NCBI GenBank assembly: GCA_977020255.1
Contig: CDROCS010000253.1
Location: 372,001-436,000, forward strand
Reading direction: 5' to 3'
Source of the DNA: Obrimoposthia wandeli
Lineage: Eukaryota
Length of the DNA: 64,000 nt
Shown here: piece by piece, positions 6,618 to 44,122 of the stretch
Position numbering within the stretch: position 1 is the first letter of the stretch
Layout of the letters: every line of letters starts with the position of its first letter
Program-made: the position numbers and the translations under genes
Notes under the pieces: model-generated
What the model was told of the DNA's origin: nothing
What the model saw: only the letters and a program-made list of their open reading frames with translations
Database searches by the model: none

Positions 6618-6643
6618 TAATTATAATGCGAATCATTTTCGTT
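6618..6643 (-). promoter_or_regulatory. Fur-box-like operator overlapping a TATAAT -10 element of the large lipoprotein gene
   Basis: AATGCGAATCATTTTCGTT (6625-6643) matches AATGAGAATnATTnTCATT at 15/17 defined positions; minus-strand TATAAT at 6620-6625. Confidence 0.65.
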
Positions 6644-6803
6644 TACGAGTTTTTTTGTTGTTTTAATTAACTATTTAGTAAGCATTACCTATTGAAATGA
6701 TAAAATGGTGCTTTAACCTTCATTTGGCTATTTAACCTTAACCATCTCTAACAGAATTCAGGTTATTTACGGTGATATGCTGTATGCATTATTTAAGTAA
6801 ATT

Positions 6804-6823
6804 GATAAGAGATAATCATTATT
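6804..6823. promoter_or_regulatory. Second, weaker Fur-box-like site
   Basis: GATAAGAGATAATCATTATT contains 12/13 of the right part of GATAATGATAATCATTATC. Confidence 0.4.
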
Positions 6824-6937
6824 GAGCACTAATTTAGTTTTTTTCATACTGGCTTATGGAGCTAAAATTAAAACGTAAACACAATAGATATCCCCATTAC
6901 ATCAAGATAAATATTCAAGATGCTTGAGCTATTTCAG

Positions 6938-6966
6938 CCAATAAAAAACCGACGCTAAGTCGGTTT
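6938..6966 (-). terminator. Intrinsic terminator of the tad-apbE operon
   Basis: AAACCGAC-loop-GTCGGTTT followed by a U-tract on the minus strand. Confidence 0.8.
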
Positions 6967-7001
6967 ATCAGTTATTTAACTCGCTTGTCATAAACTGCCA
7001 G

Positions 7002-7826
7002 CTAAAAAACAAAGTGCCAATATATACCAGCATGGCGTGCATCAAGCTCAACCTCACCCGTTACCGTATCCAATATCTGTTGTGAGTCAGCAATACTGGT
7101 CGTCATATTAGCTTTATAGTCTATAAATACTGCACGTAATTCTACTTTACTGTGCCATTGTGGTAATTGATAAACTATTGAAGCGAGATAACCAGTCGCA
7201 TTACTAAAGTCAGCCTGTGAATTTATGACTAAACTTTCATCTGTGCGTGCTTGTCCTGAGATAAGTTCTTGTGCAGAAGGTATTAAGGCATCTGAAAACT
7301 CATTAAAAACCCTGAGTTCAGTATCTTCATCACTGCGAGCTGGCTTGACCAATAACGACGCTGATTGATCTGCCAACTTAAGGCTGAAATGACTTACTAA
7401 CCCCAAACCAAGCTGTAAATTATCACTTAATTGGTAATAAGGAATAAGCTCTACTTCGACACGCGTAAATTTCATATCTGGATCGCTAATACGATCCCAG
7501 TGATAGCCACCATTAAGCTGCACACTAAAGCGTTCATTGACTTTATAGTTTGCGCCTACCCCAAATACAGCAAAGCCACCCGTCTTAATTTTTTCACTGT
7601 AATCAACCGCTGTGACTTGCTCACCATCTCGACTATAAGTCACGTTAGTATTACCTAGCGCAAGCGTATCCCCTCCATTAGTTATGCCACCAAAAATGGA
7701 CCAAGATAGCTCACCTTGCCTTTGATGAACTTGGGCTTGAGCCAAGTTTGAACTGGCAAGTGTTAATCCTAAAGTAATAACAAAGACTAAGGGGGCTAAA
7801 ATAAACCCTGTTTGCTTATTTTTCAT
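7002..7826 (-). CDS. Outer-membrane beta-barrel protein, unknown function
   Basis: Signal peptide (..LAQA), alternating amphipathic strands, C-terminal GIYWHFVF; ATGA overlap with apbE. Confidence 0.7.
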   Translation of the reverse strand: MKNKQTGFILAPLVFVITLGLTLASSNLAQAQVHQRQGELSWSIFGGITNGGDTLALGNTNVTYSRDGEQVTAVDYSEKIKTGGFAVFGVGANYKVNERFSVQLNGGYHWDRISDPDMKFTRVEVELIPYYQLSDNLQLGLGLVSHFSLKLADQSASLLVKPARSDEDTELRVFNEFSDALIPSAQELISGQARTDESLVINSQADFSNATGYLASIVYQLPQWHSKVELRAVFIDYKANMTTSIADSQQILDTVTGEVELDARHAGIYWHFVF

Positions 7827-8776
7827 TGAATGACTTCCTTTTGGCTGTTGTTGATGCAGCCACTTTTAGATAAATATGCAGTATCTTGATGAAAATTAAG
7901 CGCATCATCAATAAAGATTGCTTTAATATTTTGTTGGGCAAAACTGCCATTTAATAGACTGGGTTTGATACTCAATGCGGTACTAAAAATACCACTGGTA
8001 AGTACGCTTTTACTTAACACAGAAACCGATAACACTTGTTGAGCAATACCTTGTTCAGAAAGAATATGCGAACCTCGCTCTTTGCCATAATTAAACTGCC
8101 GATGATAATGACCTGAGCTAGCTAAAGCTTGATCAGATAAAGCAATACTGCCACAAATATTATCCGCAACTTTTGGATGTTGGATAGCTACTCGAAAGAC
8201 ACTATTGTCCGGCTTGTTACCCCAAGAAATAATGTCGCCACCAAAGTTAATCAAACCGGCACTTATGCCTTTTTTTTTACATAGCGCCATCGCCAGATCA
8301 ACACTGTATTCTTTAACTACACCGCCCAGATCAAACTGAGTATTACTGTCATTAAAGTGCAAAAAGTTACCACTGATTGCCCAACTATCTAAACCCATCG
8401 CTCGCTGATATTTTTTAAATAGTTGCGATTTAGTTAACTGCGGCATTTGCAGTGCCATTTTTTTAATGGTGCCAACACAAATATCAAAAGTCCCTTGAGT
8501 TGCTTTTGACAATTCTCGCACCCGAGTAAGAATAGCTAAGCTTTCTGGCTCAAGGTGAACCTGCGATAAGGCTCGGTTATTTACCTCTCGATTTAACCAA
8601 GAGCTTTGCTGATAAAAATTATATTTATGCTCTAAAGCTAAAGTTTGTGCTTGCACACGTTCAGCCACTTCATTGGCATGTTCCGCGTTATCTGCCACTA
8701 ACAACAGCTCACAGTTAACCGTCATAGCACAAAACTGCCGACTATAAATGCGAGCTTGATCTGAATGACTAGCCAT
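7823..8776 (-). CDS. apbE: FAD:protein FMN transferase (ApbE family), no signal peptide
   Basis: FCAMT, FDICVG, DLGGVVKEY, INFGGDI, ALASSGHY, HI motifs. Confidence 0.9.
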   Translation of the reverse strand: MASHSDQARIYSRQFCAMTVNCELLLVADNAEHANEVAERVQAQTLALEHKYNFYQQSSWLNREVNNRALSQVHLEPESLAILTRVRELSKATQGTFDICVGTIKKMALQMPQLTKSQLFKKYQRAMGLDSWAISGNFLHFNDSNTQFDLGGVVKEYSVDLAMALCKKKGISAGLINFGGDIISWGNKPDNSVFRVAIQHPKVADNICGSIALSDQALASSGHYHRQFNYGKERGSHILSEQGIAQQVLSVSVLSKSVLTSGIFSTALSIKPSLLNGSFAQQNIKAIFIDDALNFHQDTAYLSKSGCINNSQKEVIQ

Positions 8777-8783
8777 TTTGACA

Positions 8784-10007
8784 CTAGAAACGATAATTCA
8801 CTCCTAGCACCGCCCAACTTGCCGCAAATTGGTTTGTTTGTTCGTAGCGATTAACCGCGAAATCAAGTTGCCATTCATTAGTCACTTGGTAGCTGATAGT
8901 TAAACCATAAGTGTCTGCAGAGAAACTACCTAAGCGAGTATCATTGCTACCATCACCACTGGCCATAAAGTATGGCTTTTCAACATTAGGATTAAGATAA
9001 AATGTAGCTTGGCTTTGTTCGTAGCGAATATATTCCGGGATGATAAATAAGCCATCAAACACTTCAAAACTGAAACTAGCACTCGTGGTATGAGAGCTTA
9101 TATTCCAGTTATCTTGATAATAGCGGTAGCTAAACTGACCGGTAAGCCATGGCCAGAATTGTGCTGAATAACTTAATTTAGTACCAAAACCATTACGAAT
9201 ATCAGGTCTACTATCAGCGGATAAAAAGTACTCATCATCCGTAATGGTATTGTCTTCGTTAATATCAATACCACGTAAAATGGTGAGGTAATGATTACTC
9301 AAGTAACCATTATCATGATTAAAGAATAACTTCATATCAAAAACACTGGTTGGTGATAAGACTTGAGTCAGCCCAGTTTCAAAATTTATCACTTGGATTT
9401 TTTCTTCAGTTCGGCTTTGATAACCCGTACCAAAAACTAAGGTTTCATCATTTAAGTAAGCAAAACCAATATTAACTGAGCGGTTTTTTCCCTTATCTAA
9501 AAACAATAAATATGACGCCGAAACACTGCTACTTTTATAGTCACTTTCTTTTGAATGGGCGACACCAATAGTCCATTCATTACGATAAACATCACGTATT
9601 GTTAGCGCGGCGGCGGCTGATTTTCTGGTATCTTCTAATGGCACTCTTTGTATTTGATAGCGGCTAACATCGTAGGCATAACCTAATAATGTTTCCTCTG
9701 TCATCGCTTGCCCTTGCTGAAGCTCATCTTGACGAAAAATAACCTCTGCATTAGAAACGCCTCCAGAGTTAGCTATTTGCCAAGTCGGTGATGCGCCAGT
9801 AACAGAGTCATAACCAAGTGATAAGTCCAAACTATAATCAACACCAAAATCTACTGTTAAGGCTAATGATGTGTCTGCAACCTTAATACGGTCGTCATCT
9901 TCTTGGTATTGCATTTGATGCAAAGACACTGTTTGTTCTGCTTGAGCTAGCCCTGAGCAAATGGCTGTACAGCCAAGTAAACTAATTTTAATTTTTTTAT
10001 TCATCAT
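8784..10007 (-). CDS. DUF3570-family outer-membrane beta-barrel with flavinylation motif DSVTGAS
   Basis: Signal peptide MMNKKIKISLLGCTAICSGLAQA; YQEDDDRIKV, YDSVTGAS, HSKESDY, YRYYQDNWNISSHT; terminal YRF; context with apbE/DUF4266/TlpA. Confidence 0.8.
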   Translation of the reverse strand: MMNKKIKISLLGCTAICSGLAQAEQTVSLHQMQYQEDDDRIKVADTSLALTVDFGVDYSLDLSLGYDSVTGASPTWQIANSGGVSNAEVIFRQDELQQGQAMTEETLLGYAYDVSRYQIQRVPLEDTRKSAAAALTIRDVYRNEWTIGVAHSKESDYKSSSVSASYLLFLDKGKNRSVNIGFAYLNDETLVFGTGYQSRTEEKIQVINFETGLTQVLSPTSVFDMKLFFNHDNGYLSNHYLTILRGIDINEDNTITDDEYFLSADSRPDIRNGFGTKLSYSAQFWPWLTGQFSYRYYQDNWNISSHTTSASFSFEVFDGLFIIPEYIRYEQSQATFYLNPNVEKPYFMASGDGSNDTRLGSFSADTYGLTISYQVTNEWQLDFAVNRYEQTNQFAASWAVLGVNYRF

Positions 10008-10038
10008 TTTCTCTTTAATGTTTGTAAATAAACCGAGT

Positions 10039-10641
10039 TTATTTACAACCACACCCCCCGCCTGCAATACCGTCGCCGCCTAAAGTGGCTGCTTTTGAAA
10101 TATATATTTTACTAGCGAATTTTTTCATCTCTGGTGCGACACCACCAGGTAACATAGCGGGTTCAGCTAATTTTTCTTTTTGCCACGGTTTTACTTCTTT
10201 CTCGATAAACCAACTGTCAATCCAAGTAAAACCTTTATTTAACCACTGACCTGCTGGGCTGACGGAAGGTGGGGCTTTTTGAGTAATAGGCGCAAGTGTC
10301 AATAAGGGAGTATCCTGCTTAACTTGCCCTATTTTATCTACCTGATTATTTACCTTGTTATTCTGCTGACTTTTGGCAGCCACTTTCCCCTGTTCAATAC
10401 TAGTTTCACCACTCGCTTCAATAGAAGCTGGCTGCATTGATCCACTAGCACGTCCTTTAGTTTTGTATCTTTTCACTACGTGGGTATTACTAACCACTTG
10501 CTCATTGACCTGAGCGAATACAAGCTCTTCACCTTGCCTCTCATTATTACTAACATCTACTGCTTTATTATCAGCTGCCATAACAAAAGTAGGTGAAAGC
10601 ACAAGAGCACTTATTAAGACTAAATAGTGTGTCTTGTTCAC
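10039..10641 (-). CDS. DUF4266-domain protein with long N-terminal extension
   Basis: C-terminal VKPWQKEKLAEPAM...GGDGIAGGGCGCK; GTG start overlaps the tlpA stop (GTGA). Confidence 0.8.
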   Translation of the reverse strand: MNKTHYLVLISALVLSPTFVMAADNKAVDVSNNERQGEELVFAQVNEQVVSNTHVVKRYKTKGRASGSMQPASIEASGETSIEQGKVAAKSQQNNKVNNQVDKIGQVKQDTPLLTLAPITQKAPPSVSPAGQWLNKGFTWIDSWFIEKEVKPWQKEKLAEPAMLPGGVAPEMKKFASKIYISKAATLGGDGIAGGGCGCK

Positions 10642-11186
10642 TTTAACGCTCCTAATTGAGTTAAATCTTGCTTTATCACTGCACCAATATTAGCAATGGC
10701 ACCCAACCTGATTCCTAATACTTTATTGTGTTGGATATAATACAAGGCAGGCATACCAATGGGTTCAAAAGTACTGATAACTTGCTGCTTTTGATCATCA
10801 ATAACGCGAAAAGATAATGAGATTTCTTTTAAAAATTTTGCCCCAACTTCTGAGTCTTCATCAACTTGTATACCAACAAACTCAACGTTATCACCACTTA
10901 ATTCTTGGGATAAATGATCAACTTCAGGCAGCTCTATACGACATGAAACACACCACGAAGCAAAAAAATCAACCAGACTAATTTTGTCAGGGTCAAGTGC
11001 CAACTTAGCGACTAGTTCATCGGGTAAACTATCACCTCGCTGTAATGCTTGTGCGGTACCTGTCAGAGCGAATAACAAAAGTAAACTAAACAGCACAGCT
11101 AGAGCACCATTAAAAATTTTATGCGTTCGATACTGGAAAAAATATCGCTGTGAAGAAAAATATAATGTGTTCATTTGGAGCCTCAT
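10638..11186 (-). CDS. Exported TlpA/ResA-like thioredoxin
   Basis: LVDFFASWCVSCRIELP (CxxC), GMPALY; signal ending AQA; TAATG overlap with tadG. Confidence 0.88.
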   Translation of the reverse strand: MRLQMNTLYFSSQRYFFQYRTHKIFNGALAVLFSLLLLFALTGTAQALQRGDSLPDELVAKLALDPDKISLVDFFASWCVSCRIELPEVDHLSQELSGDNVEFVGIQVDEDSEVGAKFLKEISLSFRVIDDQKQQVISTFEPIGMPALYYIQHNKVLGIRLGAIANIGAVIKQDLTQLGALK

Positions 11187-12493
11187 TAAGGGGTTAGCAC
11201 CAAGGTGCGTTTGTTATTTAAATCATCAATAATTTTTTTAAATACGCCTTTTAAATCATTGGCATAATTAGCAGTATAAAAATCACCTTCACTGGCGCAG
11301 AAGCGCATATTCTGTTCAGCAGTTGGGTCACTGTAGCTATTAGGAAAATACAAGGAAACTATGCGTATATCTAAAGTCTCCTTTATATAACTGCACAGCG
11401 GTAATTCATCTAAACGACAGATATCATAGCCCCCTGTAGAGTAACGACTTTCTTCCTTAATTAGCTTACACCAAGGGGTACTGCCACCCGGATCGCCATC
11501 AGAGATCAGTAAAACGACTTTTTGTGTTTCCTCATCTAAAAATTCACTCGGTAAGTTAGCTTGGTTAAAGGCGTGGTACTCCTGCCACTGTGGCGTTAAC
11601 ATACGAAGGCCCCATAACAAGCCTTGATCAATACTGGTGCCACCACTGGGAGCATTACTTTTGCCCGCATCAATAATAGCTTGGTCGATGATATTCCGAT
11701 CATCTGTTAATAATATGCGGGCGGCATTAGGGCCGGAACAACCAGTCTCGGTACTTTCTAATTCTAAATGGCTATCCACTGTTTGTTGTAATTGAGCATA
11801 ATTGAGGTACTGACTGATCCAAGGATAATCTGGATTCTGACTGTCACCACTGGTCAAATATTCAAAACAATGATTAGACTGCTCGTAGTAATCATTGGTC
11901 AATGAGAGGGTAATACCATCACTAAATGGTGTAATAGCAATTTTTGCTTGCTGATAGTGGCCCTTTTCAATGGTTAGTAAATCAGTTAGCTGCGCTAGAG
12001 TCGCTTGCATTTCATCAGTTTCACCCCACATTGAACCAGAGTAATCCATAATAATACTGAGCTCTAAATTTTGCTGACTCTGGTTAGGTTTAACTGTAGT
12101 TGAACCTTTAATCGTTATCGGTACTTGATCAGCAAGTAAGAGCGCATCAATCTCTGCACGAATACTTAACTGAAAAATGCCGTTGTCATTACTAATATTC
12201 ACGCTATCGCTGCTAATATCGCCTAAGCCATTAAATTGTTGAATAATGGCTGTTGCCGCCGATAAAGTGGTACCTTTTTTCGGATCCTCTCGTGAGGCTA
12301 TATACATGGTGGCAACTTCACTGGCATTACCGAGTTGAATTTGCTTGGCGAAGATGGCTGATACTGTGATGGCAATTCCCCCTAAAGCAAGTAGCGGTAA
12401 AGCAACTAACAGCGCGGCAATAAAGATCATGCCTTGTTGTTTCCTCAAAGAGGTACCATGAAAGCGAACGTTATGTTTACTATTCGTCATCAT
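11186..12493 (-). CDS. tadG: TadG-like pilus-associated vWA protein
   Basis: QQG + hydrophobic pseudopilin N-terminus; MIDAS elements IIMDYSGSM, GGTSIDQGL, LLISDG; start at 12493 with RBS. Confidence 0.8.
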   Translation of the reverse strand: MMTNSKHNVRFHGTSLRKQQGMIFIAALLVALPLLALGGIAITVSAIFAKQIQLGNASEVATMYIASREDPKKGTTLSAATAIIQQFNGLGDISSDSVNISNDNGIFQLSIRAEIDALLLADQVPITIKGSTTVKPNQSQQNLELSIIMDYSGSMWGETDEMQATLAQLTDLLTIEKGHYQQAKIAITPFSDGITLSLTNDYYEQSNHCFEYLTSGDSQNPDYPWISQYLNYAQLQQTVDSHLELESTETGCSGPNAARILLTDDRNIIDQAIIDAGKSNAPSGGTSIDQGLLWGLRMLTPQWQEYHAFNQANLPSEFLDEETQKVVLLISDGDPGGSTPWCKLIKEESRYSTGGYDICRLDELPLCSYIKETLDIRIVSLYFPNSYSDPTAEQNMRFCASEGDFYTANYANDLKGVFKKIIDDLNNKRTLVLTP

Positions 12494-13124
12494 ATGTCTT
12501 TTCTCTTCGCACCATAACGGCACGCGCATATAAATGACTAAAGTCACTGGCATCGCTAAACTTGGCAAATAAACTCATGCCAGTTATGTTCTGGCAAATT
12601 TGTACCATAAATAATATCGGTTCGTCTTTACCATTACTTGCTTTAGGTAAGCTACCGGCAACAGTATCGGTATCACGCCAAGCACAATCACCACTACCAT
12701 GGCTAAAACTGATAGGTTCACCAGCCGTATCTCGGTTATTAAACTCATAAACGCGCACCGCGATATCTTGTTGCGATAATTCATTACGGGCAATACGCGT
12801 TAACTCTGTCACTTGATCCTGTGCTAGCGGTAGTTCATCGTTGTCATCATCAGCGGTGGATAGATCAGGGTAATATTGTTGCCTATGGCTAATAATGGTC
12901 GCTAAGCTATAACTTAAGCGTTCAAGCTTACTTTGCTTTTGCAAGTAAGCTGTTAAATCAAAGATGAGTAAAACTACCATCAATAAAAAAGGTAAAACGG
13001 CGATAAACTCAAGTAAGACAACACCTTGTTGCTGAGCATAACGAGGCTGGCGTACCATAGAACAAGACTTAGCCGGCGCTGACATGTGATGAATACTTAT
13101 GGAATTACTCATGGAAGTACTCAT
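12480..13124 (-). CDS. tadF: TadF/TadE-like pseudopilin
   Basis: QQG-VVLLEFIAVLPFLLMVVLLIFD; start uncertain (13124-13148). Confidence 0.75.
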   Translation of the reverse strand: MSTSMSNSISIHHMSAPAKSCSMVRQPRYAQQQGVVLLEFIAVLPFLLMVVLLIFDLTAYLQKQSKLERLSYSLATIISHRQQYYPDLSTADDDNDELPLAQDQVTELTRIARNELSQQDIAVRVYEFNNRDTAGEPISFSHGSGDCAWRDTDTVAGSLPKASNGKDEPILFMVQICQNITGMSLFAKFSDASDFSHLYARAVMVRREKTYDDE

Positions 13125-13131
13125 ATTGAGA

Positions 13132-13605
13132 TTAATGCTTAGGCTCATGTTTCACCAAAATATCCGCACTAAAGGGAAACATATTTTGTAACCAAGGACT
13201 GAGTAAAGTCACCTGATAAGACACTTTATATTTAGCCAACAAGCCATTTTTATCTACGGCATTATTGTTTGTATCTTGGTTAGCAAGTTGTGTTGGTGAG
13301 CTATAAAAACTTGCCTGTTCAACGACAAGTTTACTGCTATCTAATAGTGAGCTTGGATTAGCAGTCATTGCATTGAGCAGTTGGCTTTGATAATTAGCGC
13401 CCGATGCAGAAGATAACTTGACCTTTCGAGCGGCTTCGCTCACAACATGATTCAGACTGGCATAGATAATAAGCCCGCGTGATAACTCTAATGCACTAAA
13501 GACAATAAACAAAAATATCGGCAGCACCAAAGCAATCTCCATTATCATGCTACCCCGTTGTTTTTGTTTACCACATGGAAAATATCTAATACTCGTGTTA
13601 ACCAA
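13132..13605 (-). CDS. tadE: TadE-like pseudopilin
   Basis: QRG-SMIMEIALVLPIFLFIVFSALE. Confidence 0.85.
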   Translation of the reverse strand: MVNTSIRYFPCGKQKQRGSMIMEIALVLPIFLFIVFSALELSRGLIIYASLNHVVSEAARKVKLSSASGANYQSQLLNAMTANPSSLLDSSKLVVEQASFYSSPTQLANQDTNNNAVDKNGLLAKYKVSYQVTLLSPWLQNMFPFSADILVKHEPKH

Positions 13606-15351: not shown

Positions 15352-15357
15352 TGCCCC

Positions 15358-16290
15358 TTACTCATCAACTTTACTCATTTTAGCGATAATATAAAGCCCT
15401 AAAATTATGCTAAGAGTTGAATACGTTGCAATTATTTGACCTCGTTCGTCATAAAGCAAATAGTCAAAAATATATTTGGCTTGGTACCAAAAAAGCAGTA
15501 AGAATAAAGGCGGCATTATCGCGATAATTTTTGCTGAGGTACGCGGTTCAGCGGTCATTGCTAAAACCTTTTGTTGCAAGGCTTTACGCTGATGTAAGTT
15601 TTCCATCAATTGCCGTAATATTTGTGACAACTGGCCGCCGGCATGTTGATTTAACAGTAAGGTCACGGTAAAAAATTTAAAGCTGGCAAGTTTTATCCGC
15701 AAAGTAGCATCTTGCAATGCTTGCTCTAATGAAAGACCTATGGCTAACAAGTTATTAATACGGGTAAAAGTATCACCTACTGGGCCAGCCATTTCTTCAC
15801 TCACATGAGCAATAGCCGCGGGTACTGATACACCTGCACTTACCGCTCGGCTAATACTGGCAATTGCCGTAGGGAAATCAGCTTCAAAATGCTGTAGTTG
15901 ACGTCGTTGCAACCAACGAACAACCGATATACTTATAACAATGTAAAAACAGATAAGCACTATTACCTGCCAATAAGCCGGTAATTTCAAAGTACTCCAC
16001 CATAAAATAGGTAGTAACAAGGCCGCAAAAATCCCCAAACGCCACGCCAGTTTTACTGGCACCACAGTTACTAACCGTTGTTGACGAACAAATAACCACA
16101 GTCGCCAGCCATGGTGCTGACCATTTTTATTAAATAATAATAACGCAGTACTGCCTCTTGACTTTAATGGTGCTAAATCAAGATAACGGTTAATACGGAT
16201 TGAATGTAAGCGCTGATTTTTTTGGTATTTAAACCAATAAAAAGCACTTACGATGGCTAAAGTAATTAGAATAAACAACAACGGAATCAT
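15358..16290 (-). CDS. tadB: TadB inner-membrane platform protein
   Basis: FPTAIASISRAVSAG, HAGGQLSQIL, AMTAEPRTSA. Confidence 0.9.
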   Translation of the reverse strand: MIPLLFILITLAIVSAFYWFKYQKNQRLHSIRINRYLDLAPLKSRGSTALLLFNKNGQHHGWRLWLFVRQQRLVTVVPVKLAWRLGIFAALLLPILWWSTLKLPAYWQVIVLICFYIVISISVVRWLQRRQLQHFEADFPTAIASISRAVSAGVSVPAAIAHVSEEMAGPVGDTFTRINNLLAIGLSLEQALQDATLRIKLASFKFFTVTLLLNQHAGGQLSQILRQLMENLHQRKALQQKVLAMTAEPRTSAKIIAIMPPLFLLLFWYQAKYIFDYLLYDERGQIIATYSTLSIILGLYIIAKMSKVDE

Positions 16291-17738
16291 GATAATTCCA
16301 GTGACTTTAACAGTTGTTCATCAAGGCCATAATAGCGAACTTTATCGAGACAATAAGGCTGTGTTTTATGACTAATAAATTCACCCGCTAACTCACCACT
16401 GGTTAATTCTCGACTGTATTTATAACTAAATAAGTCTTGTACTAATAAGTTTTCACCTTCAATACCAACCAACTCACAAATACTGGTTATACGCCTTTTA
16501 CCATCACGCATACGTTCAATCTGCATCACAATATCAATGGCTGAATTCATCTGTCTTTTTAGCGCTATCGGCGGTAAATTAACTTGCCCCATCAGTAACA
16601 TATTCTCTAATCGAATTAATGCGTCACGGGCAGAGTTAGCATGCAGGGTAGACATTGAGCCATCATGGCCGGTATTCATTGCTTGCATCATTTCAAAGGC
16701 TTCTTCACCACGCACTTCACCGATAATGATACGATCTGGTCGCATCCGTAGCGCATTTTTTAGCAAGTCTCTCAATGATACTTCTGCCCCGCCCTCTAAA
16801 CTAGCCGGACGGCTTTCGAGTGTTACCACATGAGCTTGTTGTAATTTGAGTTCAGCCGCATCTTCTATAGTCACAATACGTTCTTGTTCATCAATTTGAT
16901 AAGACAAGGCATTTAGCAGCGTAGTTTTACCGGCACCTGTGCCGCCAGAGACTAAGATATTAAGCCGGCAATGACTGGCAATTTTCAAGAAATTGACCAT
17001 GCCGTTAGACATCGCACCTTTGTCTGCTAGGTCTTGTAACTGCAAACCCATGGTCGAAAATTTTCGGATTGAGATGCTAGTGCCAGATAAACTTAATGGC
17101 GGAATAACAATATTGACACGACTGCCATCGGCTAATCTGGCATCGACCATAGGTTTACTTTCATCGATACGACGACCAACCGCCGAGGCGATACGACGCG
17201 CGACATGTAATAAATGGTTTTCATCTCGAAATCTGGCGTTAGTCAGTACTAACTTACCACTACGCTCAACATAAACTTTGTCAAAACCATTGATCAAAAT
17301 ATCATTAACACTGTCATCATCAAGCAAAGACTGTAGCGGGCCTAAACCCAGCATATCTGCCAATAATAACTGAGCTATTTGCTGCTGCGCTTGATAAGTT
17401 AATGGCAAACGTTGCTGATTAGCGATAGTGCTTACCGCTTGTAATATGCGTTCGGCAAGTTCGTCTTGCTTTAATTTGGTCGCTACTGAGGGATCAATAC
17501 TGGCAAAAATCTGCTCACGGATCACTTGATATACTTGCGTATCTACTTCAACAGTCGACTGACTATTATCATGATGATTTATTTGAACATCTTGCTTTAA
17601 AGTAATCGGTAAATCTTGACTACTGAGTGGCAATGGATCCGTTGATAAAACAGAATCTACTATAGGCTTTATTGCCGACTGCTCATTGCTTAGTAAAGCT
17701 GGCTGGTTATTAGGTTGACTAACCTTACGACCAAACAT
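16287..17738 (-). CDS. tadA: TadA/CpaF pilus assembly ATPase
   Basis: Walker A GGTGAGKT, TIEDAAEL, LRMRPDRIIIGEVRG, MNTGHDGSMSTLHAN. Confidence 0.95.
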   Translation of the reverse strand: MFGRKVSQPNNQPALLSNEQSAIKPIVDSVLSTDPLPLSSQDLPITLKQDVQINHHDNSQSTVEVDTQVYQVIREQIFASIDPSVATKLKQDELAERILQAVSTIANQQRLPLTYQAQQQIAQLLLADMLGLGPLQSLLDDDSVNDILINGFDKVYVERSGKLVLTNARFRDENHLLHVARRIASAVGRRIDESKPMVDARLADGSRVNIVIPPLSLSGTSISIRKFSTMGLQLQDLADKGAMSNGMVNFLKIASHCRLNILVSGGTGAGKTTLLNALSYQIDEQERIVTIEDAAELKLQQAHVVTLESRPASLEGGAEVSLRDLLKNALRMRPDRIIIGEVRGEEAFEMMQAMNTGHDGSMSTLHANSARDALIRLENMLLMGQVNLPPIALKRQMNSAIDIVMQIERMRDGKRRITSICELVGIEGENLLVQDLFSYKYSRELTSGELAGEFISHKTQPYCLDKVRYYGLDEQLLKSLELS

Positions 17739-19045
17739 TATGTTTTACCACTGGCTTTTTTATACCAAGTACGCAAAGGCATCAAACGTGTTAGTAACGA
17801 GTTATTAGTTGGTAAATTAACGTCTAGAATATCATTACTTAATGCTAATAAACTTCGGCCTACGGCATGAAGTTCACTTAATAAAGACTCGCCTAATTCA
17901 GCCGCTTTTAACACTTTTTTCGGCGCATAAGGCAATACATGATCAAAATTTCTTCCTAAGTGCTCCGCTAATATAGTTTGCGATAAACTATGTTCACTAT
18001 TACCGTGTAATAGATTTAATACTAATAAAGTCCGCTGAGCGTACCTTTGTTCTCCCAACTGGCTTAATAATGCTTTGCACTGACGTAAACTTGCTAACGT
18101 TGGGCTACACACTATCACTTGCACGTCAGCATTAAACAAGGTGTCTGCTATGCCTGGCTCAATAAGTAAATGTGCAGGTAGATCCCAAACCAAATAGTTA
18201 AACTCATCGGCTAATACTTGTGCTAATTTCTGATGATTTTGACTGTTAAAATGATACTTTTGCCCTAAAGATTTCAGTAAATACAAGCGTGGTTCTATTT
18301 GTAAACAAGATCTTTCTATCAGTAATTTGTCAACGTTTTGATGTTCATTAAGCAACTTTATCAAGCCAACGCCAGCATTAGTATTGGCATTAAGTAATAA
18401 GTCGATGTCACCGCCATAACAATTAAGATCGGTGACTAAGGTTTTAGCGCCATGATGAGCAAATGCTCTCGCTAAATTAGCGGCGATAGTAGAAACCCCA
18501 ACACCACCACTACAGCCAGCAATGGCAATACTTTTTCCATTACCAACCCTAGCAGTTTTTTCTACCTTACCCGTTGTTCGCCCTAACGCATGTAACAATA
18601 AAGATTGGTTTAATGGTTTACATAAATAATCATCAATACCCATATTTTTCAATTCACGGTATAAATCAACATTATCACTGCTACCAATGACCAGAACTCG
18701 TGTGCCCGGCTCACATACATTAGCCAATGCATTTATTGAGGTGATAACTCCCTCTTCTTCATCTATATCTACAATAAGAATTTTAGGTGATTGATTATCA
18801 CGCAGGTAGCTGATGGCATAATCTATATTGCCATTAAGCGTCTTAGTGGTATTCGCATGAACTCCCGGCGTGCCTGTATTAAGGCTTTTCATTGATGTCG
18901 AAAAGTTACTGAATACTTTATTTAATAACAGCTCATTACTTTTATCGGTTACAAAAGCGAGCAAACTATCAGCCTGTTGCTGACCTTTATGCGGACCTAT
19001 ATGAGAAATAACACTTTGAGAAGCATTGATAACAGAATTCGTCAT
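17738..19045 (-). CDS. tadZ: TadZ/CpaE pilus localisation ATPase
   Basis: Receiver-like N-terminus plus ParA/MinD-like domain with deviant Walker A GCSGGVGVST. Confidence 0.88.
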   Translation of the reverse strand: MTNSVINASQSVISHIGPHKGQQQADSLLAFVTDKSNELLLNKVFSNFSTSMKSLNTGTPGVHANTTKTLNGNIDYAISYLRDNQSPKILIVDIDEEEGVITSINALANVCEPGTRVLVIGSSDNVDLYRELKNMGIDDYLCKPLNQSLLLHALGRTTGKVEKTARVGNGKSIAIAGCSGGVGVSTIAANLARAFAHHGAKTLVTDLNCYGGDIDLLLNANTNAGVGLIKLLNEHQNVDKLLIERSCLQIEPRLYLLKSLGQKYHFNSQNHQKLAQVLADEFNYLVWDLPAHLLIEPGIADTLFNADVQVIVCSPTLASLRQCKALLSQLGEQRYAQRTLLVLNLLHGNSEHSLSQTILAEHLGRNFDHVLPYAPKKVLKAAELGESLLSELHAVGRSLLALSNDILDVNLPTNNSLLTRLMPLRTWYKKASGKT

Positions 19046-19647
19046 TATTTCACCTTAGTCAAGTCAACGAGGGTTTCGCTTGCTGGCGAGGCTACGGGAT
19101 AACGATAACGTTTAACCGCTTCCACCGCTTTAACACCATCCATTGGTGCTAAACTAGCGCCGCGTATTAATTGAACAGGATCAGCAACCATCATGGCAAG
19201 ATTTCGACTGCTGGCACAGCCTAAATCAGCATAACTAGTGCTATGACACGCGGGTGCAATAGCGCGAAAATACTCACTCGTAATAACTAAACTATCAGTT
19301 GGTTTATCGCTATAACGAAAAGCAATATTAGATCCCTGTATACCTAAGGTTAATAACCACTGATGTAATGCCTTTTGGTGGCGAGTAATTAATTGCTCAT
19401 GGCCAGCAACAAGTATTCGCTGTGGGTAGCTATTACCTTGCAAGGCAATAAATTTATATAATTGTGTTTGTTCTTTTCCACTAAGCGCTTCATTTATTAA
19501 GGTAAGTTCGAGCTTAGCATTAACAAGCTCTAATTCTATCGCGACTGCTTTTGCTGATACTGGCACTTCAGTGTATTGGGTAAGTGTATGGCTACAGCCA
19601 CTTAACAGCATAAGCACTAGCAGCATGAAAGAGGTTTGGTATAACAT
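19045..19647 (-). CDS. cpaD: CpaD/RcpB-like pilus lipoprotein
   Basis: LLSG-C lipobox; LGCASSRNLAMMVADPVQL motif; position in tad operon. Confidence 0.8.
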   Translation of the reverse strand: MLYQTSFMLLVLMLLSGCSHTLTQYTEVPVSAKAVAIELELVNAKLELTLINEALSGKEQTQLYKFIALQGNSYPQRILVAGHEQLITRHQKALHQWLLTLGIQGSNIAFRYSDKPTDSLVITSEYFRAIAPACHSTSYADLGCASSRNLAMMVADPVQLIRGASLAPMDGVKAVEAVKRYRYPVASPASETLVDLTKVK

Positions 19648-19688
19648 AATATTTCTTCTTGTTGTGGTTGTTACAGCGCCTGCTGCTA

Positions 19689-21128
19689 TCAATAGTAAAA
19701 GCCGTTATCGCCAAGCAATCTAGGTTGCTTGTCATTAACGGATAGCGACGGAACTACGTCATCTTGTTGCCAAGAGACATTAAATAAACGCTCTAGATCA
19801 CTATACGGCGTATAAAAATCGGTTGGTAATGCAAGATTTTTATCACGTGAAGGCTCTACCACATAAGCTTCGGCAATAATCACCAATTCAGTTTCATTAC
19901 GATTATAATTAGTTGAACGAAACAAGGCGCCGAGTACGGGTATATCGCCAAGAAAAGGAAACTTACTGACACTACTAGCTTCATCATTCATCAGTAATCC
20001 TGCCAGCATAAAGCTTTCTCCACTGGCTAGTTCCACGGTAGTTTTTGCGCGTCTGGCTTTGATAGCAGGTACGGATAAACCATTAAATGTCTGTGCACTA
20101 ATAAGATCTAAACTACTGACCTCAGGTTCAATTTGTAAACTAATACGCCTATCACTTAACACCGTTGGCGTTATATTAAGTAAGACACCATATTGTTTAT
20201 ATTCGATAACCACTTGACCATTTTGCGTTAAGCTCACTGGGATAGGAAATTCACCACCCGCCATAAAAGTAGCGGTTTCGCCAGACATAGCCGTTAAGTT
20301 GGGCTCAGCCAATAATTTTGCTGCCCCTTCTTTTGCTAACGCATCAAGCATTATGCTGTGCGAATTTAGCTTTAGGCCAAAAATTTTATTTAAACTGCCA
20401 AAAATATCGACACCAATAACTTTACCTACCGCTTGATTAACATCCATGCTCGAGCTACCCACACTTGGCTGACTCCAATTAGCATTTTGTATACCTAAGA
20501 AATTTTCCCCTGGATGTAAACCTAATTGAGTGGTAACTGTGCGAGAAACTTCAGCAATGCGTACGCGGATATTAACTTGATTGGGTAACGTGACCGCCAA
20601 CTGATTAATAGGCTCTAATACAGCATTACTCGCATCATTACTGGCATTTTTTTTCTCGCCAGCATTCGAACCTTCATTCTCAGTAGAAACCATATAACTG
20701 CGCGCTAATTCAATCACAGCCGTAGCCATAATGGCTGAGGGTACCGTGCCTTTTAGTAATAACTGACCATTATTTGATATCGCCTCAACCCTAGCTTGGG
20801 GGTATAATTCTGCAATTTGAGCATTTAACTCGGTAGTATTGTGTTGCACTTTAATCTGATCTGAAAAGATTACCGATCCGTTAGCATCGAGCGCATATAA
20901 ATTGGTGTTACCCGCTTGGCGACCAAAGATAAATATTTTATCTGCCGCTGGTACCTGATAACTGGCAATACTTGGGTTAGCAATAAAAATAGTGGTGGCT
21001 TTACTGGGTAAGTTGATTAAATAGCCTTCGCTTATACTTAATTCTAACGCTAAGCTCTGCCCCGTATAAAGGAACAATAAACTTGATAATGCCAATTTAA
21101 TTTGGCGGGTAAAAGGTAAAGCAGTCAT
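19689..21128 (-). CDS. rcpA: RcpA/CpaC secretin
   Basis: IFIANPSIA, QVNIRVRIAEV, LAEPNLTAMSGETATFMAGGEFPIP, PFLGDIPVLGALFRS; start at 21128 after AGGAG. Confidence 0.93.
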   Translation of the reverse strand: MTALPFTRQIKLALSSLLFLYTGQSLALELSISEGYLINLPSKATTIFIANPSIASYQVPAADKIFIFGRQAGNTNLYALDANGSVIFSDQIKVQHNTTELNAQIAELYPQARVEAISNNGQLLLKGTVPSAIMATAVIELARSYMVSTENEGSNAGEKKNASNDASNAVLEPINQLAVTLPNQVNIRVRIAEVSRTVTTQLGLHPGENFLGIQNANWSQPSVGSSSMDVNQAVGKVIGVDIFGSLNKIFGLKLNSHSIMLDALAKEGAAKLLAEPNLTAMSGETATFMAGGEFPIPVSLTQNGQVVIEYKQYGVLLNITPTVLSDRRISLQIEPEVSSLDLISAQTFNGLSVPAIKARRAKTTVELASGESFMLAGLLMNDEASSVSKFPFLGDIPVLGALFRSTNYNRNETELVIIAEAYVVEPSRDKNLALPTDFYTPYSDLERLFNVSWQQDDVVPSLSVNDKQPRLLGDNGFYY

Positions 21129-21129
21129 A

Positions 21130-22029
21130 TTACTCTTCTCCTGATTGCTTTTCTTTAGCATGACTAAGTACTTGTTTTTCGCCTTGCATTAACACCATAT
21201 GTGCACGCTGGGCATGTTGACCAAATTGCGGTAAAATATCAGCAAAGACGGTATCGGGGGGTATTTCTTCCGTGTGAATAGCTTCGGTATATTCTCCTGA
21301 GGAGCCACGTAATAATAAACTTAAGCGACCCAGTTGCTGTGCTATCGCTAGCTTTTGTGCCTGCTTTACACTTACTTCTAAGGTTACTGTACTGTCATCA
21401 TTATATGTAGGTTTACTTTCAGCATTACCATCATCCTCTATTTCTAATTTATTGAGTTCACGGTCAACGGCAATCAATCGCACATTAGCAACCAACTGTT
21501 GTACTGAAGCGCTGGCAGCAATTTGCCAAGCATCTTGCTCTTCACTACGTTTTAATTTGTGATAAAAAAGTACATCAACTCTATCGCCCGGACTCACTAA
21601 ACCAGCAATAGCCGATTGTGCATCAACCTTAATTGCCATAGCACGTTTACCACTCACTAATGAGGTGGTAAGAAAGTCACTATCCTGCACTAAAACCAGA
21701 CTATCAAACCGAACATAATCGCCACTTACTAATGGATAACGACTGATGGCACCTTTAAACGTTGCCAAGGTAAAGCCTTGACGTTTAATTAAGCCAACAA
21801 GATTTTGTTCCTGTTGTTCTGAAATCAGTTGCCAAGTAAAGTGTTGCGCTAAAACAGCTTCGCCTGCGTTAAGGTTGGTATTAAGTGTTAATACCTGAAT
21901 TTGTCTTTCATTTATCATCTCAGCATTAATCGCTGGTGCTTTAATGCCACTTAGCTGCAAATAAATACCAACAACACCAATAATTGCGATGCTAAAAGTT
22001 AGATAAATTATATTTCTGGTCGAAAACAT
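21130..22029 (-). CDS. cpaB: RcpC/CpaB pilus assembly protein (SAF domain)
   Basis: GKRAMAIKVD..AGLVSPGDRVDV, VTLEVS..AQQLGRLSLLLR. Confidence 0.9.
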   Translation of the reverse strand: MFSTRNIIYLTFSIAIIGVVGIYLQLSGIKAPAINAEMINERQIQVLTLNTNLNAGEAVLAQHFTWQLISEQQEQNLVGLIKRQGFTLATFKGAISRYPLVSGDYVRFDSLVLVQDSDFLTTSLVSGKRAMAIKVDAQSAIAGLVSPGDRVDVLFYHKLKRSEEQDAWQIAASASVQQLVANVRLIAVDRELNKLEIEDDGNAESKPTYNDDSTVTLEVSVKQAQKLAIAQQLGRLSLLLRGSSGEYTEAIHTEEIPPDTVFADILPQFGQHAQRAHMVLMQGEKQVLSHAKEKQSGEE

Positions 22030-22056
22030 CGAAACCAGCACTCCTAAAATATGTAA

Positions 22057-22548
22057 TTAAGTTAAAACAAGGGCCGCGCCAAGTGAGATAGCTATGCCAT
22101 AGGGAACTGTAATAATTGCTTTTTTATTACCTTGATAACGAGGGCTGAGTAAATTTAAACAAGAGTTATAACTGATGATTAATAACGCTATCAAACCGCC
22201 TATTAAGGTTGTTAATAACAAAAAAGTCTTAAGTTGTTCAAATTCAAACCAAACAGAAAGCGCTGCAATAAGTTTAATATCTCCGGCTGCCAAACCACCT
22301 AAGTGGTAAACAGGTATTGCCGCTAACATAAGTAATAGCGCCGTTAATATTCGTAGCCCTAATTCGTAAGACGAACCGCTAATGTCTTCTTGTTGTTGTA
22401 ATAGCAAAGTAAACACTGCACTTAGCAGCACTAGTAAAGACAAAGAATTAGGTAATTGGCGAAAACGCCAGTCCAAATAAATAGCGCTAACTAATAACAC
22501 GGCTAACAAGTAATTAAGGCCGATTAAAAACACAGTATTAGTTAACAT
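22057..22548 (-). CDS. tadV: TadV/CpaA prepilin peptidase (A24)
   Basis: LDWRFRQLPN, GGLAAGDIKL, VPYGIAI. Confidence 0.9.
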   Translation of the reverse strand: MLTNTVFLIGLNYLLAVLLVSAIYLDWRFRQLPNSLSLLVLLSAVFTLLLQQQEDISGSSYELGLRILTALLLMLAAIPVYHLGGLAAGDIKLIAALSVWFEFEQLKTFLLLTTLIGGLIALLIISYNSCLNLLSPRYQGNKKAIITVPYGIAISLGAALVLT

Positions 22549-22588
22549 TACTGAGCGTCATCCTTTCAACATCAGGTATTGATAACGA

Positions 22589-22789
22589 TTACTCTGCGGC
22601 AGTAAGTTCAGTAATTTTGGTTTTAATCGTTTCAAAAGTTTGCTCTATGATAGAGCTTAAACCTTCATCACCACCAAATGCTGACACCAACAAACCAACA
22701 ATAATGGCTGCTAATACGGAATATTCAATGGCAGAAACGCCACGCTGGTCTTGTAGAAAAGCTTTAAAATAATGATAAATGGGTAACAT
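22589..22789 (-). CDS. flp: Flp type IVb/c pilin
   Basis: FLQDQRG-VSAIEYSVLAAII Flp motif; 66 aa. Confidence 0.95.
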   Translation of the reverse strand: MLPIYHYFKAFLQDQRGVSAIEYSVLAAIIVGLLVSAFGGDEGLSSIIEQTFETIKTKITELTAAE

Positions 22790-22875
22790 GATGATTCACT
22801 GGGTTAATTAATGTTAATAAAATATTAATAAATGTTAATTTTTCGGTATCTTACCTAGAGAAAAACCATAATGCA

Positions 22876-22912
22876 AACAATAACTATTATCATTATAATT
22901 ATTGATCTCATT
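22876..22912. promoter_or_regulatory. Fur-box-like operator in the divergent flp / lipoprotein promoter
   Basis: AATAACTATTATCATTATA (22879-22897) matches GATAATGAT(A/T)ATCATTATC at 15/19; ATTATAAT (22892-22899) supplies TATAAT on both strands. Confidence 0.65.
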
Positions 22913-22966
22913 ACCATCTAATGTAATAATTTACTAATACCCCCACTCGTAGTAGATCAATTTTTC

Positions 22967-39136: not shown

Positions 39137-39145
39137 ACCAAAATT

Positions 39146-39589
39146 AGTGAGCTGACACTATAAGCCGGGTTTTGTATCTCTTCCTAAGAAAAGTGACAAT
39201 CATTCGTCTAGGCCTTAAATCGCTCTAAGGCTCAAGCAACCTACCCGGTTTCCACGCGAACCACGCTTATATTATTGAAACTTGCGTTTTAATAATCATG
39301 AAACCCTATTTGGTCTTGCTCCAGGTGGAGTTTACCCTGCAATTACTGTTACCAGCAATCCGGTGCGCTCTTACCGCACCCTTTCAGCCTTACCTGTGCT
39401 TCTTTACTTATAAATAAGGAAGGAAGCCATCGGCGGTCTTCTCTCTGCTGCACTTGTCGTCGGCTTACGCCGCCCAGGCGTTACCTGGCACCCTGTTCAT
39501 TGGAGCCCGGACTTTCCTCCCCCTCATCTGTCTACATCAAACCTAAATTTGAAATACAACGATAAAGCAGCGATTGTCTGGTCAACTCG
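39146..39589 (-). ncRNA. rnpB: RNase P RNA, bacterial type A
   Basis: Minus strand has GACCAGACAATCGCTG, GAGGAAAGTCCGGGCTC, GGGTGCCAGGTAACGCCTGG, GGGTGCGGTAAGAGCGCACC, GGTAAACTCCACC, AAAACCCGGCTTAT; ends approximate. Confidence 0.97.

Positions 39590-43513: not shown

Positions 43514-44122
<609 letters not shown>

What the first reader, a model, noticed from the sequence alone, without database searches (positions are those of the whole stretch)
6618..22912. Same 23-bp Fur-box/-10 promoter motif, in the same orientation, upstream of both flanking lipoprotein genes
Seen: plus strand 6618-6640 TAATTATAATGCGAATCATTTTC and minus strand from 22901 TAATTATAATGATAATAGTTATT are identical at 17/23 positions, including the first 11. 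Both are oriented the same way relative to their lipoprotein gene, and each overlaps a TATAAT -10. The second site also gives a TATAAT facing flp, so one operator could control the whole tad-apbE operon and the divergent gene. Known: Fur represses by binding GATAATGATAATCATTATC-like boxes over core promoters. Inference: the locus is one co-regulated iron-responsive unit; I do not know Fur as a typical direct regulator of tad loci.
Basis: partly seen in the sequence, partly recalled or inferred. Interest (0 to 1): 0.7.

Follow-up and report, generated by a model that had tools for sequence, protein, structure and literature searches.

The report
Fur-type iron operators flanking a pilus operon
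Two short DNA sites that look like binding sites for the iron repressor Fur sit in the promoters of two surface-lipoprotein genes flanking a Tad-pilus/flavin-redox operon in a Colwellia chromosome; this fits a known kind of switch, but suggests that the conserved gene block responds to iron starvation.

Summary
That mutual likeness is what two AT-rich intergenic regions give by chance (73% of shuffles). Their likeness to the Fur box is not chance. Each holds a 15/19 match to the consensus (shuffle P 0.003-0.009), and they are the only 2 of 25 non-coding segments in the window to reach 15/19.

Comparison changes the picture. The two lipoproteins (LP1, LP2) are a conserved pair. In Pseudoalteromonas denitrificans and Moritella they are divergent neighbours sharing one Fur-like box between back-to-back promoters. 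In 16 of 18 LP2-carrying genomes the pair lies beside the same tad + thioredoxin/DUF4266/DUF3570/ApbE operon.

In this Colwellia the flp promoter occupies the place of LP1's promoter beside that box, and LP1 has its own box after the operon terminator. The TATAATs inside site 2 are not conserved; the conserved promoters lie on either side of it. Five flp promoters not next to LP2 carry no Fur-like box.

Verdict: Fur-type operators for LP2 and LP1 are likely. Co-repression of the tad operon is plausible by geometry but unproven. No binding, transcript-start or expression data exist. Iron-induced tad expression is already reported in Vibrio vulnificus. This is a new member of a known kind, of moderate interest.

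The parts
4638..6506 (-). LP1: a 622-aa lipoprotein. It has the lipobox LTGC, an N-terminal CxDxNxNxxC module, a (PDPVT)n linker and about 90-aa repeats that weakly resemble CHB_HEX_C.
   Evidence: Orthologs: 71-83% identity in Colwellia relatives and 32% full-length in P. denitrificans.
6618..6640 (+). Site 1. The Fur-like 19-mer TATAATGCGAATCATTTTC lies at 6622-6640 (15/19).
   Evidence: The block AATTATAATGCGAATC is invariant in G001 and G002. The site has decayed to 12/19 in L078.
6620..6648 (-). Predicted LP1 promoter. The -35 TCGTAA is at 6648-6643, followed by a 17-nt spacer and the -10 TATAAT at 6625-6620. The Fur 19-mer spans about -9 to -27.
   Evidence: One search gives the anatomy. 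The TATAAT is invariant in four genomes. The transcript start is not mapped.
6946..6966 (-). Intrinsic terminator that ends the tad-to-OMP operon.
   Evidence: AAACCGAC-TTAGC-GTCGGTTT followed by TTTTATT.
7002..22789 (-). An 18-gene operon with tightly abutting or overlapping genes. In order: flp, tadV, rcpC, rcpA secretin, cpaD, tadZ, tadA, tadB, tadC, tadD, tadE, tadF, a 460-aa TadG-like gene, a thioredoxin-like gene, DUF4266, DUF3570, ApbE and a 274-aa outer-membrane barrel.
   Evidence: The gene order is identical in P. denitrificans.
22848..22876 (-). Predicted flp promoter. The -35 TTGCAT is at 22876-22871, followed by a 17-nt spacer and the -10 TAAGAT at 22853-22848.
   Evidence: The same TTGCAT/TTGCAA-N16/17-TAAAAT/TAGAAT is seen in the Colwellia relatives and in distant tad loci L068-L070.
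22879..22903 (-). Site 2. The Fur-like 19-mer TATAATGATAATAGTTATT lies at 22897-22879 (15/19). It sits within a phased array of four NATWAT-like hexamers at 22903-22880 (19 of 20 defined positions).
   Evidence: It lies between the two divergent -35 elements.
22902..22930 (+). Predicted LP2 promoter. The -35 TTGATC is at 22902-22907, followed by a 17-nt spacer and an extended -10 TGtAATAAT at 22922-22930.
   Evidence: It is conserved down to LP2 orthologs of 36-48% identity (window, G001, G211, L063, P. denitrificans, L064, L066).
22967..25114 (+). LP2: a 715-aa lipoprotein. It has the lipobox LFGC, the same N-terminal CxDxNxNGxC module as LP1, an Asp-rich linker and a C-terminal YVTN-type beta-propeller.

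Best explanation
Both sites are Fur-type operators, that is, iron-dependent repressor sites. They belong to the promoters of two surface lipoprotein genes, LP1 and LP2, which form a conserved gene pair.

Site 1 lies between the predicted -35 and -10 of the LP1 promoter. Fur-Fe2+ bound there would block RNA polymerase in the classical way.

Site 2 fills the 25 bp between two back-to-back -35 hexamers, TTGATC for LP2 and TTGCAT for flp. It is centred near -49 and -47 of the two predicted transcript starts. A Fur footprint of about 30 bp would reach into both -35 elements. This would repress LP2 and, probably, the 18-gene flp-tad-thioredoxin-DUF4266-DUF3570-ApbE operon when iron is plentiful, and release all of them on iron starvation.

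Shown here: the sequence matches, their rarity, their conservation, the synteny and the promoter conservation. Inferred: Fur binding, the transcript starts and the effect on flp.
For: - Fur-consensus matches: 15/19 at both sites. They are the top two non-coding sites in 64 kb; shuffle P is 0.003-0.009 and 0.097 such sites are expected.
- Small Colwellia PWM: it ranks the sites 2nd and 4th of about 128,000 positions.
- Fur and its box in this lineage: the chromosome encodes a typical Fur beside fldA. A sister Colwellia has boxes with 3 or fewer mismatches upstream of two TonB-dependent receptors, feoB and a ZnuA-family gene. One of them, GCTAATGATAATAGTTATC, shows the same AG deviation as site 2.
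- Site 1 conservation: the core is invariant in G001 and G002 at 15/19, with a compensating change.
- Fur-like array abutting the conserved LP2 -35 in orthologs: 14/19 in four Colwellia; 15/19 in P. denitrificans, where LP1 is the divergent partner; 16/19 in metagenome L066; 15/19 in Moritella sp. 24; 17/19 in G441.
- Paralogous lipoproteins with the same N-terminal module also carry 15/19 boxes.
- Iron context: the LP2 orthologs in L064 and L066 are divergent from TonB-dependent receptors, and L066 is also next to DUF3570.
- Synteny of LP2, LP1, tad and DUF3570 in 16 of 18 genomes.
- A close strain has a 12-bp, two-hexamer insertion that lengthens the array up to the flp -35.
- Precedent: iron limitation induces V. 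vulnificus flp-1 (PMC6748444).
Against: - There is no binding, transcript-start or expression evidence. No RNA run holds this DNA.
- The sites score 12-15.5 bits on the small PWM, against 19-26 for boxes at iron-uptake genes.
- Fur half-sites resemble -10 hexamers, so AT-rich promoters mimic them.
- Site 1 has decayed to 12/19 in L078 while its TATAAT is kept. The LP2 box is only 13/19 in L064.
- Five genomes with the LP2/LP1 pair (G304, G311, G586, G395, G399) have no site at 16/19 or better in that intergenic region.
- flp promoters not next to LP2 show no Fur-like box: 0 of 5, including P. denitrificans, which has the same operon.
- A site centred near -47 only touches the flp -35.
Confidence: 0.6

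Rival explanations
1. Fur controls only the two lipoprotein genes. The flp-tad operon is transcribed from its own TTGCAT/TAAGAT promoter, regulated otherwise, and merely happens to abut the LP2 operator after a rearrangement.
For: - The flp core promoter is homologous to those of distant tad loci that lack any Fur-like box.
- P. denitrificans has the identical operon with a Fur-less flp promoter (12/19), while its LP2/LP1 pair has the box.
- The 19-mer ends 2 bp short of the flp -35.
Against: - The geometry is mirror-symmetric. The box sits as close to the flp -35 as to the LP2 -35, and the LP2 arrangement is the conserved one.
- Fur footprints usually exceed the 19-mer (own knowledge).
- In P. 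denitrificans the LP1 promoter occupies exactly the position that flp occupies here.
- In the X7 strain the hexamer array is extended towards flp.
Confidence: 0.3
2. The sites are ordinary AT-rich promoter sequence, made of -10-like and UP-element-like hexamers, that resemble a Fur box by composition. Fur does not bind them.
For: - The two sites resemble each other no more than chance allows.
- The Fur consensus contains -10-like hexamers.
- The scores are moderate.
- Site 1 in L078 keeps TATAAT but loses the Fur match.
- A second Fur-like core at 6805-6828 is clearly not conserved.
Against: - Dinucleotide shuffles give P of 0.003-0.009 per region, and only these 2 of 25 non-coding segments reach 15/19.
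- The match recurs in seven lineages or paralogs of this lipoprotein family at P of 0.009 or less, but in 0 of 5 equally AT-rich flp promoters.
- G441 reaches 17/19 at the same place.
Confidence: 0.12
3. Another regulator binds the sites, for example a Fur paralog such as Zur or Mur, or an AT-tract binder such as H-NS, IHF or Fis. The signal would then be zinc, manganese, temperature or growth phase rather than iron.
For: The chromosome has a second, weaker Fur-family gene (C253:1389768). The sequence alone cannot separate Fur from close paralogs.
Against: - The sites fit GATAATGATAATCATTATC and the NATWAT hexamer array, not the TGTTATAWTATAACA-type Zur palindrome (own knowledge of the consensus).
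- The neighbouring genes in L064 and L066 are TonB-dependent receptors.
Confidence: 0.08

Closest known systems
Gammaproteobacterial Fur box (19-bp GATAATGATAATCATTATC, read as an array of NATWAT hexamers)
   Same: Both sites match 15/19, and site 2 has four phased hexamers. Both lie in promoters. Site 1 sits between the -35 and the -10, as in classical Fur repression.
   Different: The match is moderate. Site 2 lies upstream of, and only touches, two -35 elements instead of covering a -10. No binding data exist.
Single Fur box shared by divergent promoters in E. coli enterobactin genes (fepA-fes, fepB-entC, fepD-entS; recalled from own knowledge, not tested here)
   Same: One operator between divergently transcribed units would give coordinated iron control of both.
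   Different: In those cases the divergent core promoters overlap the box. Here the box sits between back-to-back -35 hexamers, and the partners are lipoprotein and pilus genes rather than siderophore genes.
Iron-limitation-induced tad1/flp-1 locus of Vibrio vulnificus (PMC6748444, citing Alice et al. 2008)
   Same: It is a Tad/Flp pilus operon whose expression responds to iron starvation.
   Different: That case rests on expression data, and the text read here shows no operator. Ours has a candidate operator and no expression data. The tad subtype also differs, because ours carries a flavinylation module.
DUF3570/DUF4266/thioredoxin-like/ApbE flavinylation clusters (Meheust et al. 2021, PMC8238504)
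   Same: The same four families sit adjacent to each other. That paper suspects a role in iron assimilation for some clusters (25 carry VIT1).
   Different: Here the module is the 3' end of a tad operon, is flanked by Fur-box lipoprotein genes and has no DsbD nearby in the window.
E. coli YncE, a Fur-regulated secreted beta-propeller (PMC5120174)
   Same: It is an exported beta-propeller protein of unknown function that is derepressed in a fur mutant. Some LP2 orthologs sit next to a TonB-dependent receptor.
   Different: No sequence or fold match specific to YncE was found; the best match is the archaeal YVTN propeller 1L0Q. LP2 is a lipoprotein with extra N-terminal domains.

Membership tests
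Fur operator (Fur box) | Match to the 19-bp consensus, or three or more phased NATWAT hexamers | tested here: met
   15/19 at 6622-6640 (+) and at 22879-22897 (-). Hexamer arrays score 16/20 for site 1 and 19/20 for site 2.
Fur operator (Fur box) | Score above the local and genomic background | tested here: met
   Window background: the sites are the top two non-coding sites, shuffle P is 0.003-0.009, and 0.097 sites are expected against 2 observed. A whole-chromosome background was not obtainable. In the sister genome G001, 14 loci carry 3 or fewer mismatches, against 7 hits for the reversed-pattern control.
Fur operator (Fur box) | Overlaps or abuts the core promoter elements of the regulated gene | tested here: inconclusive
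   The predicted promoters fit. Site 1 spans the spacer and -10 of LP1. Site 2 lies between the flp and LP2 -35 hexamers. No transcript start is mapped, and no RNA runs exist.
Fur operator (Fur box) | Conserved at orthologous loci | tested here: met
   Site 1 is 15/19 in G001 and G002 but 12/19 in L078. The site 2 equivalent is 14/19 in four Colwellia, 15/19 in P. denitrificans and Moritella, 16/19 in L066, 17/19 in G441 and 13/19 in L064. No site at 16/19 or better was found in five other genomes.
Fur operator (Fur box) | The organism encodes Fur and uses this box at iron-uptake genes | tested here: met
   A fur gene lies next to fldA on the same contig. In G001, boxes lie upstream of TonB-dependent receptors, feoB and a ZnuA-family gene. 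On C253 itself only one clear intergenic box was seen (L015).
Fur operator (Fur box) | Metal-dependent binding by Fur and iron-dependent repression | not testable with these tools
   Needs EMSA or footprinting, FURTA, and qRT-PCR with and without a chelator or in a fur mutant.
Tad/Flp pilus locus | Flp pilin, TadV prepilin peptidase, RcpC, RcpA secretin, TadZ, TadA ATPase, TadB/C, TadD, TadE/F pseudopilins | tested here: met
   Pfam hits for every one, in the canonical order.
DUF3570-type flavinylation cluster | Adjacent thioredoxin-like, DUF4266, DUF3570 and ApbE genes | tested here: met
   Pfam PF13905/PF00085, PF14086, PF12094 and PF02424 at 10638-11186, 10039-10641, 8784-10067 and 7823-8776. 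The family definition is from PMC8238504.

The most novel reading that the evidence does not exclude
The whole conserved block is one iron-starvation regulon for acquiring iron while attached to particles or surfaces. The block comprises LP2, LP1, Tad pili and the thioredoxin/DUF4266/DUF3570/ApbE module, sometimes with a TonB-dependent receptor. In this reading, Fur releases adhesion (Tad pili and large surface lipoproteins) together with an extracytoplasmic flavin-based electron-transfer module that reduces or mobilises iron. LP2, whose conserved ID[GA][FY][TS][SA]AS motif resembles an ApbE flavinylation site, would be a second flavinylated component.
Probability: 0.2. Interest if true: 0.7.

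Novelty: new member of a known kind. Interest (0 to 1): 0.42.

Why it matters
If Fur really binds here, two uncharacterised lipoprotein families and the DUF3570 flavinylation module, whose function is unknown, would gain a physiological cue: iron starvation. A Tad pilus operon would gain it too. That makes the module's suspected role in iron assimilation directly testable in marine psychrophiles. The conserved LP2-LP1-tad-DUF3570 synteny found here (16 of 18 genomes) is a useful handle whatever the regulator turns out to be. As a regulatory element the sites are ordinary. Fur boxes are well known, and iron-responsive tad expression has precedent.

Tried and rejected
- Rfam found nothing in either intergenic region, with gathering thresholds on the whole window or with permissive E-values on the two regions. 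There is no RyhB-like RNA in the 470-bp gap after site 1.
- RNA evidence: no RNA run holds the locus and all holders are contigs, so transcript starts cannot be read.
- The E. coli consensus with 3 or fewer mismatches gives 0 hits in the window. The sites only appear at 4 mismatches.
- A second Fur-like core at 6805-6828 (GATAATCATTAT, 13/19 overall) is not conserved in G001, G002 or L078 and was dropped.
- The third 15/19 site, at 43799, is inside a coding region.
- The C253 hit L014 is a coding Ile-rich stretch.
- A family-specific pattern, KATAATGAKAATAGTTATT, did no better than its reversed control and hit no LP2/LP1 intergenic region in five genomes.
- LP1 and LP2 are not paralogs overall. 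Only a roughly 50-aa N-terminal module is shared, so duplication of a gene together with its promoter is rejected as the source of the motif likeness.
- NCBIfam and the ESM Atlas gave no name for LP1 or LP2.
- The LP2 model is confident only in the propeller, which matches generic YVTN/WD40 folds.

Full report
**Where the window is.** The window is G000:C253:372001-436000. C253 is a contig of more than 3.3 Mb inside a 1.35-Gb mixed assembly. Orthologs at 73-78% protein identity lie in Colwellia MAGs and genomes, so the contig is a Colwellia chromosome.

**Gene map around the finding.**
- LP1 is a 622-aa lipoprotein at 4638-6506 (-).
- A terminator lies at 6946-6966 (-).
- An 18-gene operon on the minus strand runs from flp (22789) to 7002. 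It encodes tadV, rcpC, rcpA, cpaD, tadZ, tadA, tadB, tadC, tadD, tadE, tadF, a 460-aa TadG-like protein, a thioredoxin-like protein, DUF4266, DUF3570, ApbE and a 274-aa outer-membrane barrel.
- LP2 is a 715-aa lipoprotein at 22967-25114 (+), divergent from flp.

**The observation.**
- Both 23-mers are as stated, 17/23 identical with the first 11 identical, and both read away from their lipoprotein gene.
- This pairwise likeness is not significant. Dinucleotide shuffles of the two AT-rich intergenic regions give a pair at 17/23 or better in 73% of trials, and an exact run of 11 or more in 23%.
- The likeness to the Fur consensus is significant. The 19-mers at 6622-6640 (+) and 22879-22897 (-) match 15/19. 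They are two of three such sites in the window, and the third (43799) is inside a gene.
- They are the only 2 of 25 non-coding segments to reach 15/19, against 0.097 expected from shuffles. Per-region P is 0.003-0.009.
- A small PWM made from Colwellia boxes ranks them 2nd and 4th of about 128,000 positions. They score 12-15.5 bits, against 19-26 bits for boxes at iron-uptake genes.
- Site 2 is also a phased array of four NATWAT-like hexamers, with 19 of 20 defined positions matching.

**Does this lineage use the canonical box?**
- C253 encodes a typical Fur beside fldA.
- In the sister genome G001 the consensus with 3 or fewer mismatches hits 14 loci, against 7 hits for the reversed-pattern control. 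Intergenic hits lie upstream of two TonB-dependent receptors, feoB and a ZnuA-family gene.
- One of them, GCTAATGATAATAGTTATC, shares site 2's AG deviation.
- On C253 itself a palindromic box with a TTGCAA -35 precedes a 47-codon ORF (L015).

**Promoter anatomy.**
- Site 1. Facing LP1, the sequence reads TCGTAA-N17-TATAAT (6648-6620). The 19-mer covers about -9 to -27. The TATAAT is invariant in four genomes, and the block AATTATAATGCGAATC is invariant in G001 and G002, which keep 15/19 through a compensating change. In L078 the Fur match has fallen to 12/19.
- Site 2. They read TAAGGT in G001, G002, G211 and L063, and TATAGT in a close strain.
- What is conserved towards LP2, down to orthologs of 36-48% identity, is TTGATC (or TTGCTA)-N17-TGn(A/G)ATAAT (22902-22930).
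- What is conserved towards flp is TTGCAT-N17-TAAGAT (22876-22848). This has clear counterparts in distant tad loci: TTGCAT/TTGCAA, N16-17, TAAAAT/TAGAAT.
- The Fur-like array at 22879-22903 therefore fills the gap between two back-to-back -35 hexamers. It is centred near -49 for LP2 and -47 for flp. These positions are inferred, because no transcript start is mapped.

**Comparative evidence.**
- LP1 and LP2 share only an N-terminal CxDxNxNGxC module. They are nevertheless a conserved gene pair.
- In P. denitrificans DSM 6059, LP2 (48% identity) and LP1 (32%) are divergent neighbours. Their 157-bp intergenic region holds one box, GATAATGAGAATAGTTATT (15/19, P<0.001). It is flanked by TTGCTA-N17-TGgAATAAT towards LP2 and TTGATA-N17-TAGAAT towards LP1.
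- The same 18-gene tad-flavinylation operon lies two genes away in P. denitrificans. Its flp promoter has no Fur-like box (12/19).
- In Moritella sp. 24 the order is LP2-like, then a 15/19 box, then LP1-like, followed by flp-rcpC.
- In a sample of 401 genomes of the order, LP2 occurs in 19. In 16 of 18 examined, LP2 lies 1.3-5.7 kb divergent from rcpC, with DUF3570 about 11 kb further on. An LP1-like gene fills the gap in all five genomes checked for it.
- G441 has a 17/19 box 108-126 bp upstream of LP2.
- Five other genomes show no site at 16/19 or better there. Weaker sites could not be read.
- Metagenomic LP2 orthologs (36% identity) keep the promoter and a 16/19 (L066) or 13/19 (L064) array. 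They are divergent from TonB-dependent receptors, and L066 also has DUF3570 downstream.
- Two paralogous large lipoproteins with the same N-terminal module carry 15/19 boxes.
- Overall, 8 of 11 upstream regions of this lipoprotein family reach P of 0.01 or less, whereas 0 of 5 flp promoters away from LP2 do.

**Interpretation.** The box is a feature of the LP2/LP1 divergent promoter. In this Colwellia clade the tad operon sits between the two genes. The flp promoter now occupies the position that LP1's promoter holds in P. denitrificans, and LP1 has its own Fur-like promoter behind the operon terminator. I cannot say which arrangement is ancestral. Fur repression of LP2 and LP1 is the best-supported reading. 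Repression of flp follows from the mirror-symmetric geometry. A 12-bp, two-hexamer insertion in strain X7 keeps the array contiguous with the flp -35. Repression of flp is not supported by other tad loci.

**Context from the literature.**
- DUF3570 is an ApbE-flavinylated protein. It is typically clustered with DUF4266 and a thioredoxin-like protein, its function is unknown, and a role in iron assimilation is suspected for some clusters (PMC8238504).
- V. vulnificus flp-1 is induced about 131-fold by iron limitation (PMC6748444).
- E. coli YncE, a secreted beta-propeller, is derepressed in a fur mutant (PMC5120174).
- The C-terminus of LP2 is a YVTN-type propeller. The model has mean pLDDT 60 and is confident only for residues 400-620. 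The best match is 1L0Q.

**Limits.**
- There are no binding, transcript-start or expression data.
- The background is one window plus shuffles, not the chromosome.
- The PWM is small and biased towards the consensus.
- Several comparisons are among close relatives.

**Earlier notes of this scan.** An earlier follow-up on other DNA of the same genome also invoked Fur-like control (s1-217556). I did not test it. Another note proposed the LP2 motif DGFTSAS as an ApbE site (s1-234752). I find the motif conserved in eight orthologs.

Noticed in passing
window 24089-24109 (LP2 residues about 375-381): The motif ID[GA][FY][TS][SA]AS is conserved in all eight LP2 orthologs aligned, down to 24-38% identity. 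It resembles the Dxx[ST]xA[ST] target of ApbE flavinylation. It lies in a low-confidence linker of the structure model.
   Followed up: partly
window 6805-6828: A second Fur-like core, GATAAGAGATAATCATTATTGAG, has 12 contiguous consensus bases but only 13/19 overall. It lies in the 470-bp non-coding gap after the tad operon. It is not conserved in G001, G002 or L078, and no Rfam match covers the gap.
   Followed up: yes
L015:1480-1690 (G000:C253:3348990): A near-palindromic Fur box, CATAATGAGAATGATTATCATTATG, has a TTGCAA -35. It lies directly upstream of a 47-codon ORF or a possible small RNA with no long gene nearby. This is a candidate Fur-regulated small protein or sRNA.
   Followed up: no
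L054:1480-1540 (G001:C12:130177): TTGACA is followed by a Fur box with 3 mismatches, between two convergent genes (one a chemoreceptor) in the sister Colwellia. This may be a RyhB-like Fur-regulated sRNA promoter.
   Followed up: no
window 22878/22879, run X7 contig: A strain about 90% identical carries a 12-bp insertion, AATAAGTATAAT, exactly between the Fur-like 19-mer and the flp -35. That is two more hexamer units. It also has an 11-bp deletion at 22816 in the flp leader.
   Followed up: partly
L068:440-470, L069:3580-3610, L070:4210-4240, L071:4255-4285: The flp 5' leaders of distant tad loci share a conserved block, AAT(C/A)(A/G)ATCTCATTC. It lies just downstream of the -10 and is absent from the Colwellia leader. 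It may be a regulatory site or an RNA element of this tad subtype.
   Followed up: no
window 4638-6506; L038; L078: LP1 varies greatly in length through its PDPVT-type linker and its roughly 90-aa repeats. It is 622 aa here, 782 aa in L078, lies in a 1767-aa open frame in G001, and has relatives of 928-1642 aa elsewhere.
   Followed up: partly
window 39144-39589 (-): Bacterial RNase P class A RNA (Rfam RF00010, 299.9 bits).
   Followed up: no
G586:C2:1388618 and G395:C1:124632: In two genomes with the LP2-LP1-tad-DUF3570 block, an identical 16/19 Fur box, GTTAATGATATTTATTATC, lies about 8 kb beyond DUF3570. The adjacent gene could not be read.
   Followed up: no
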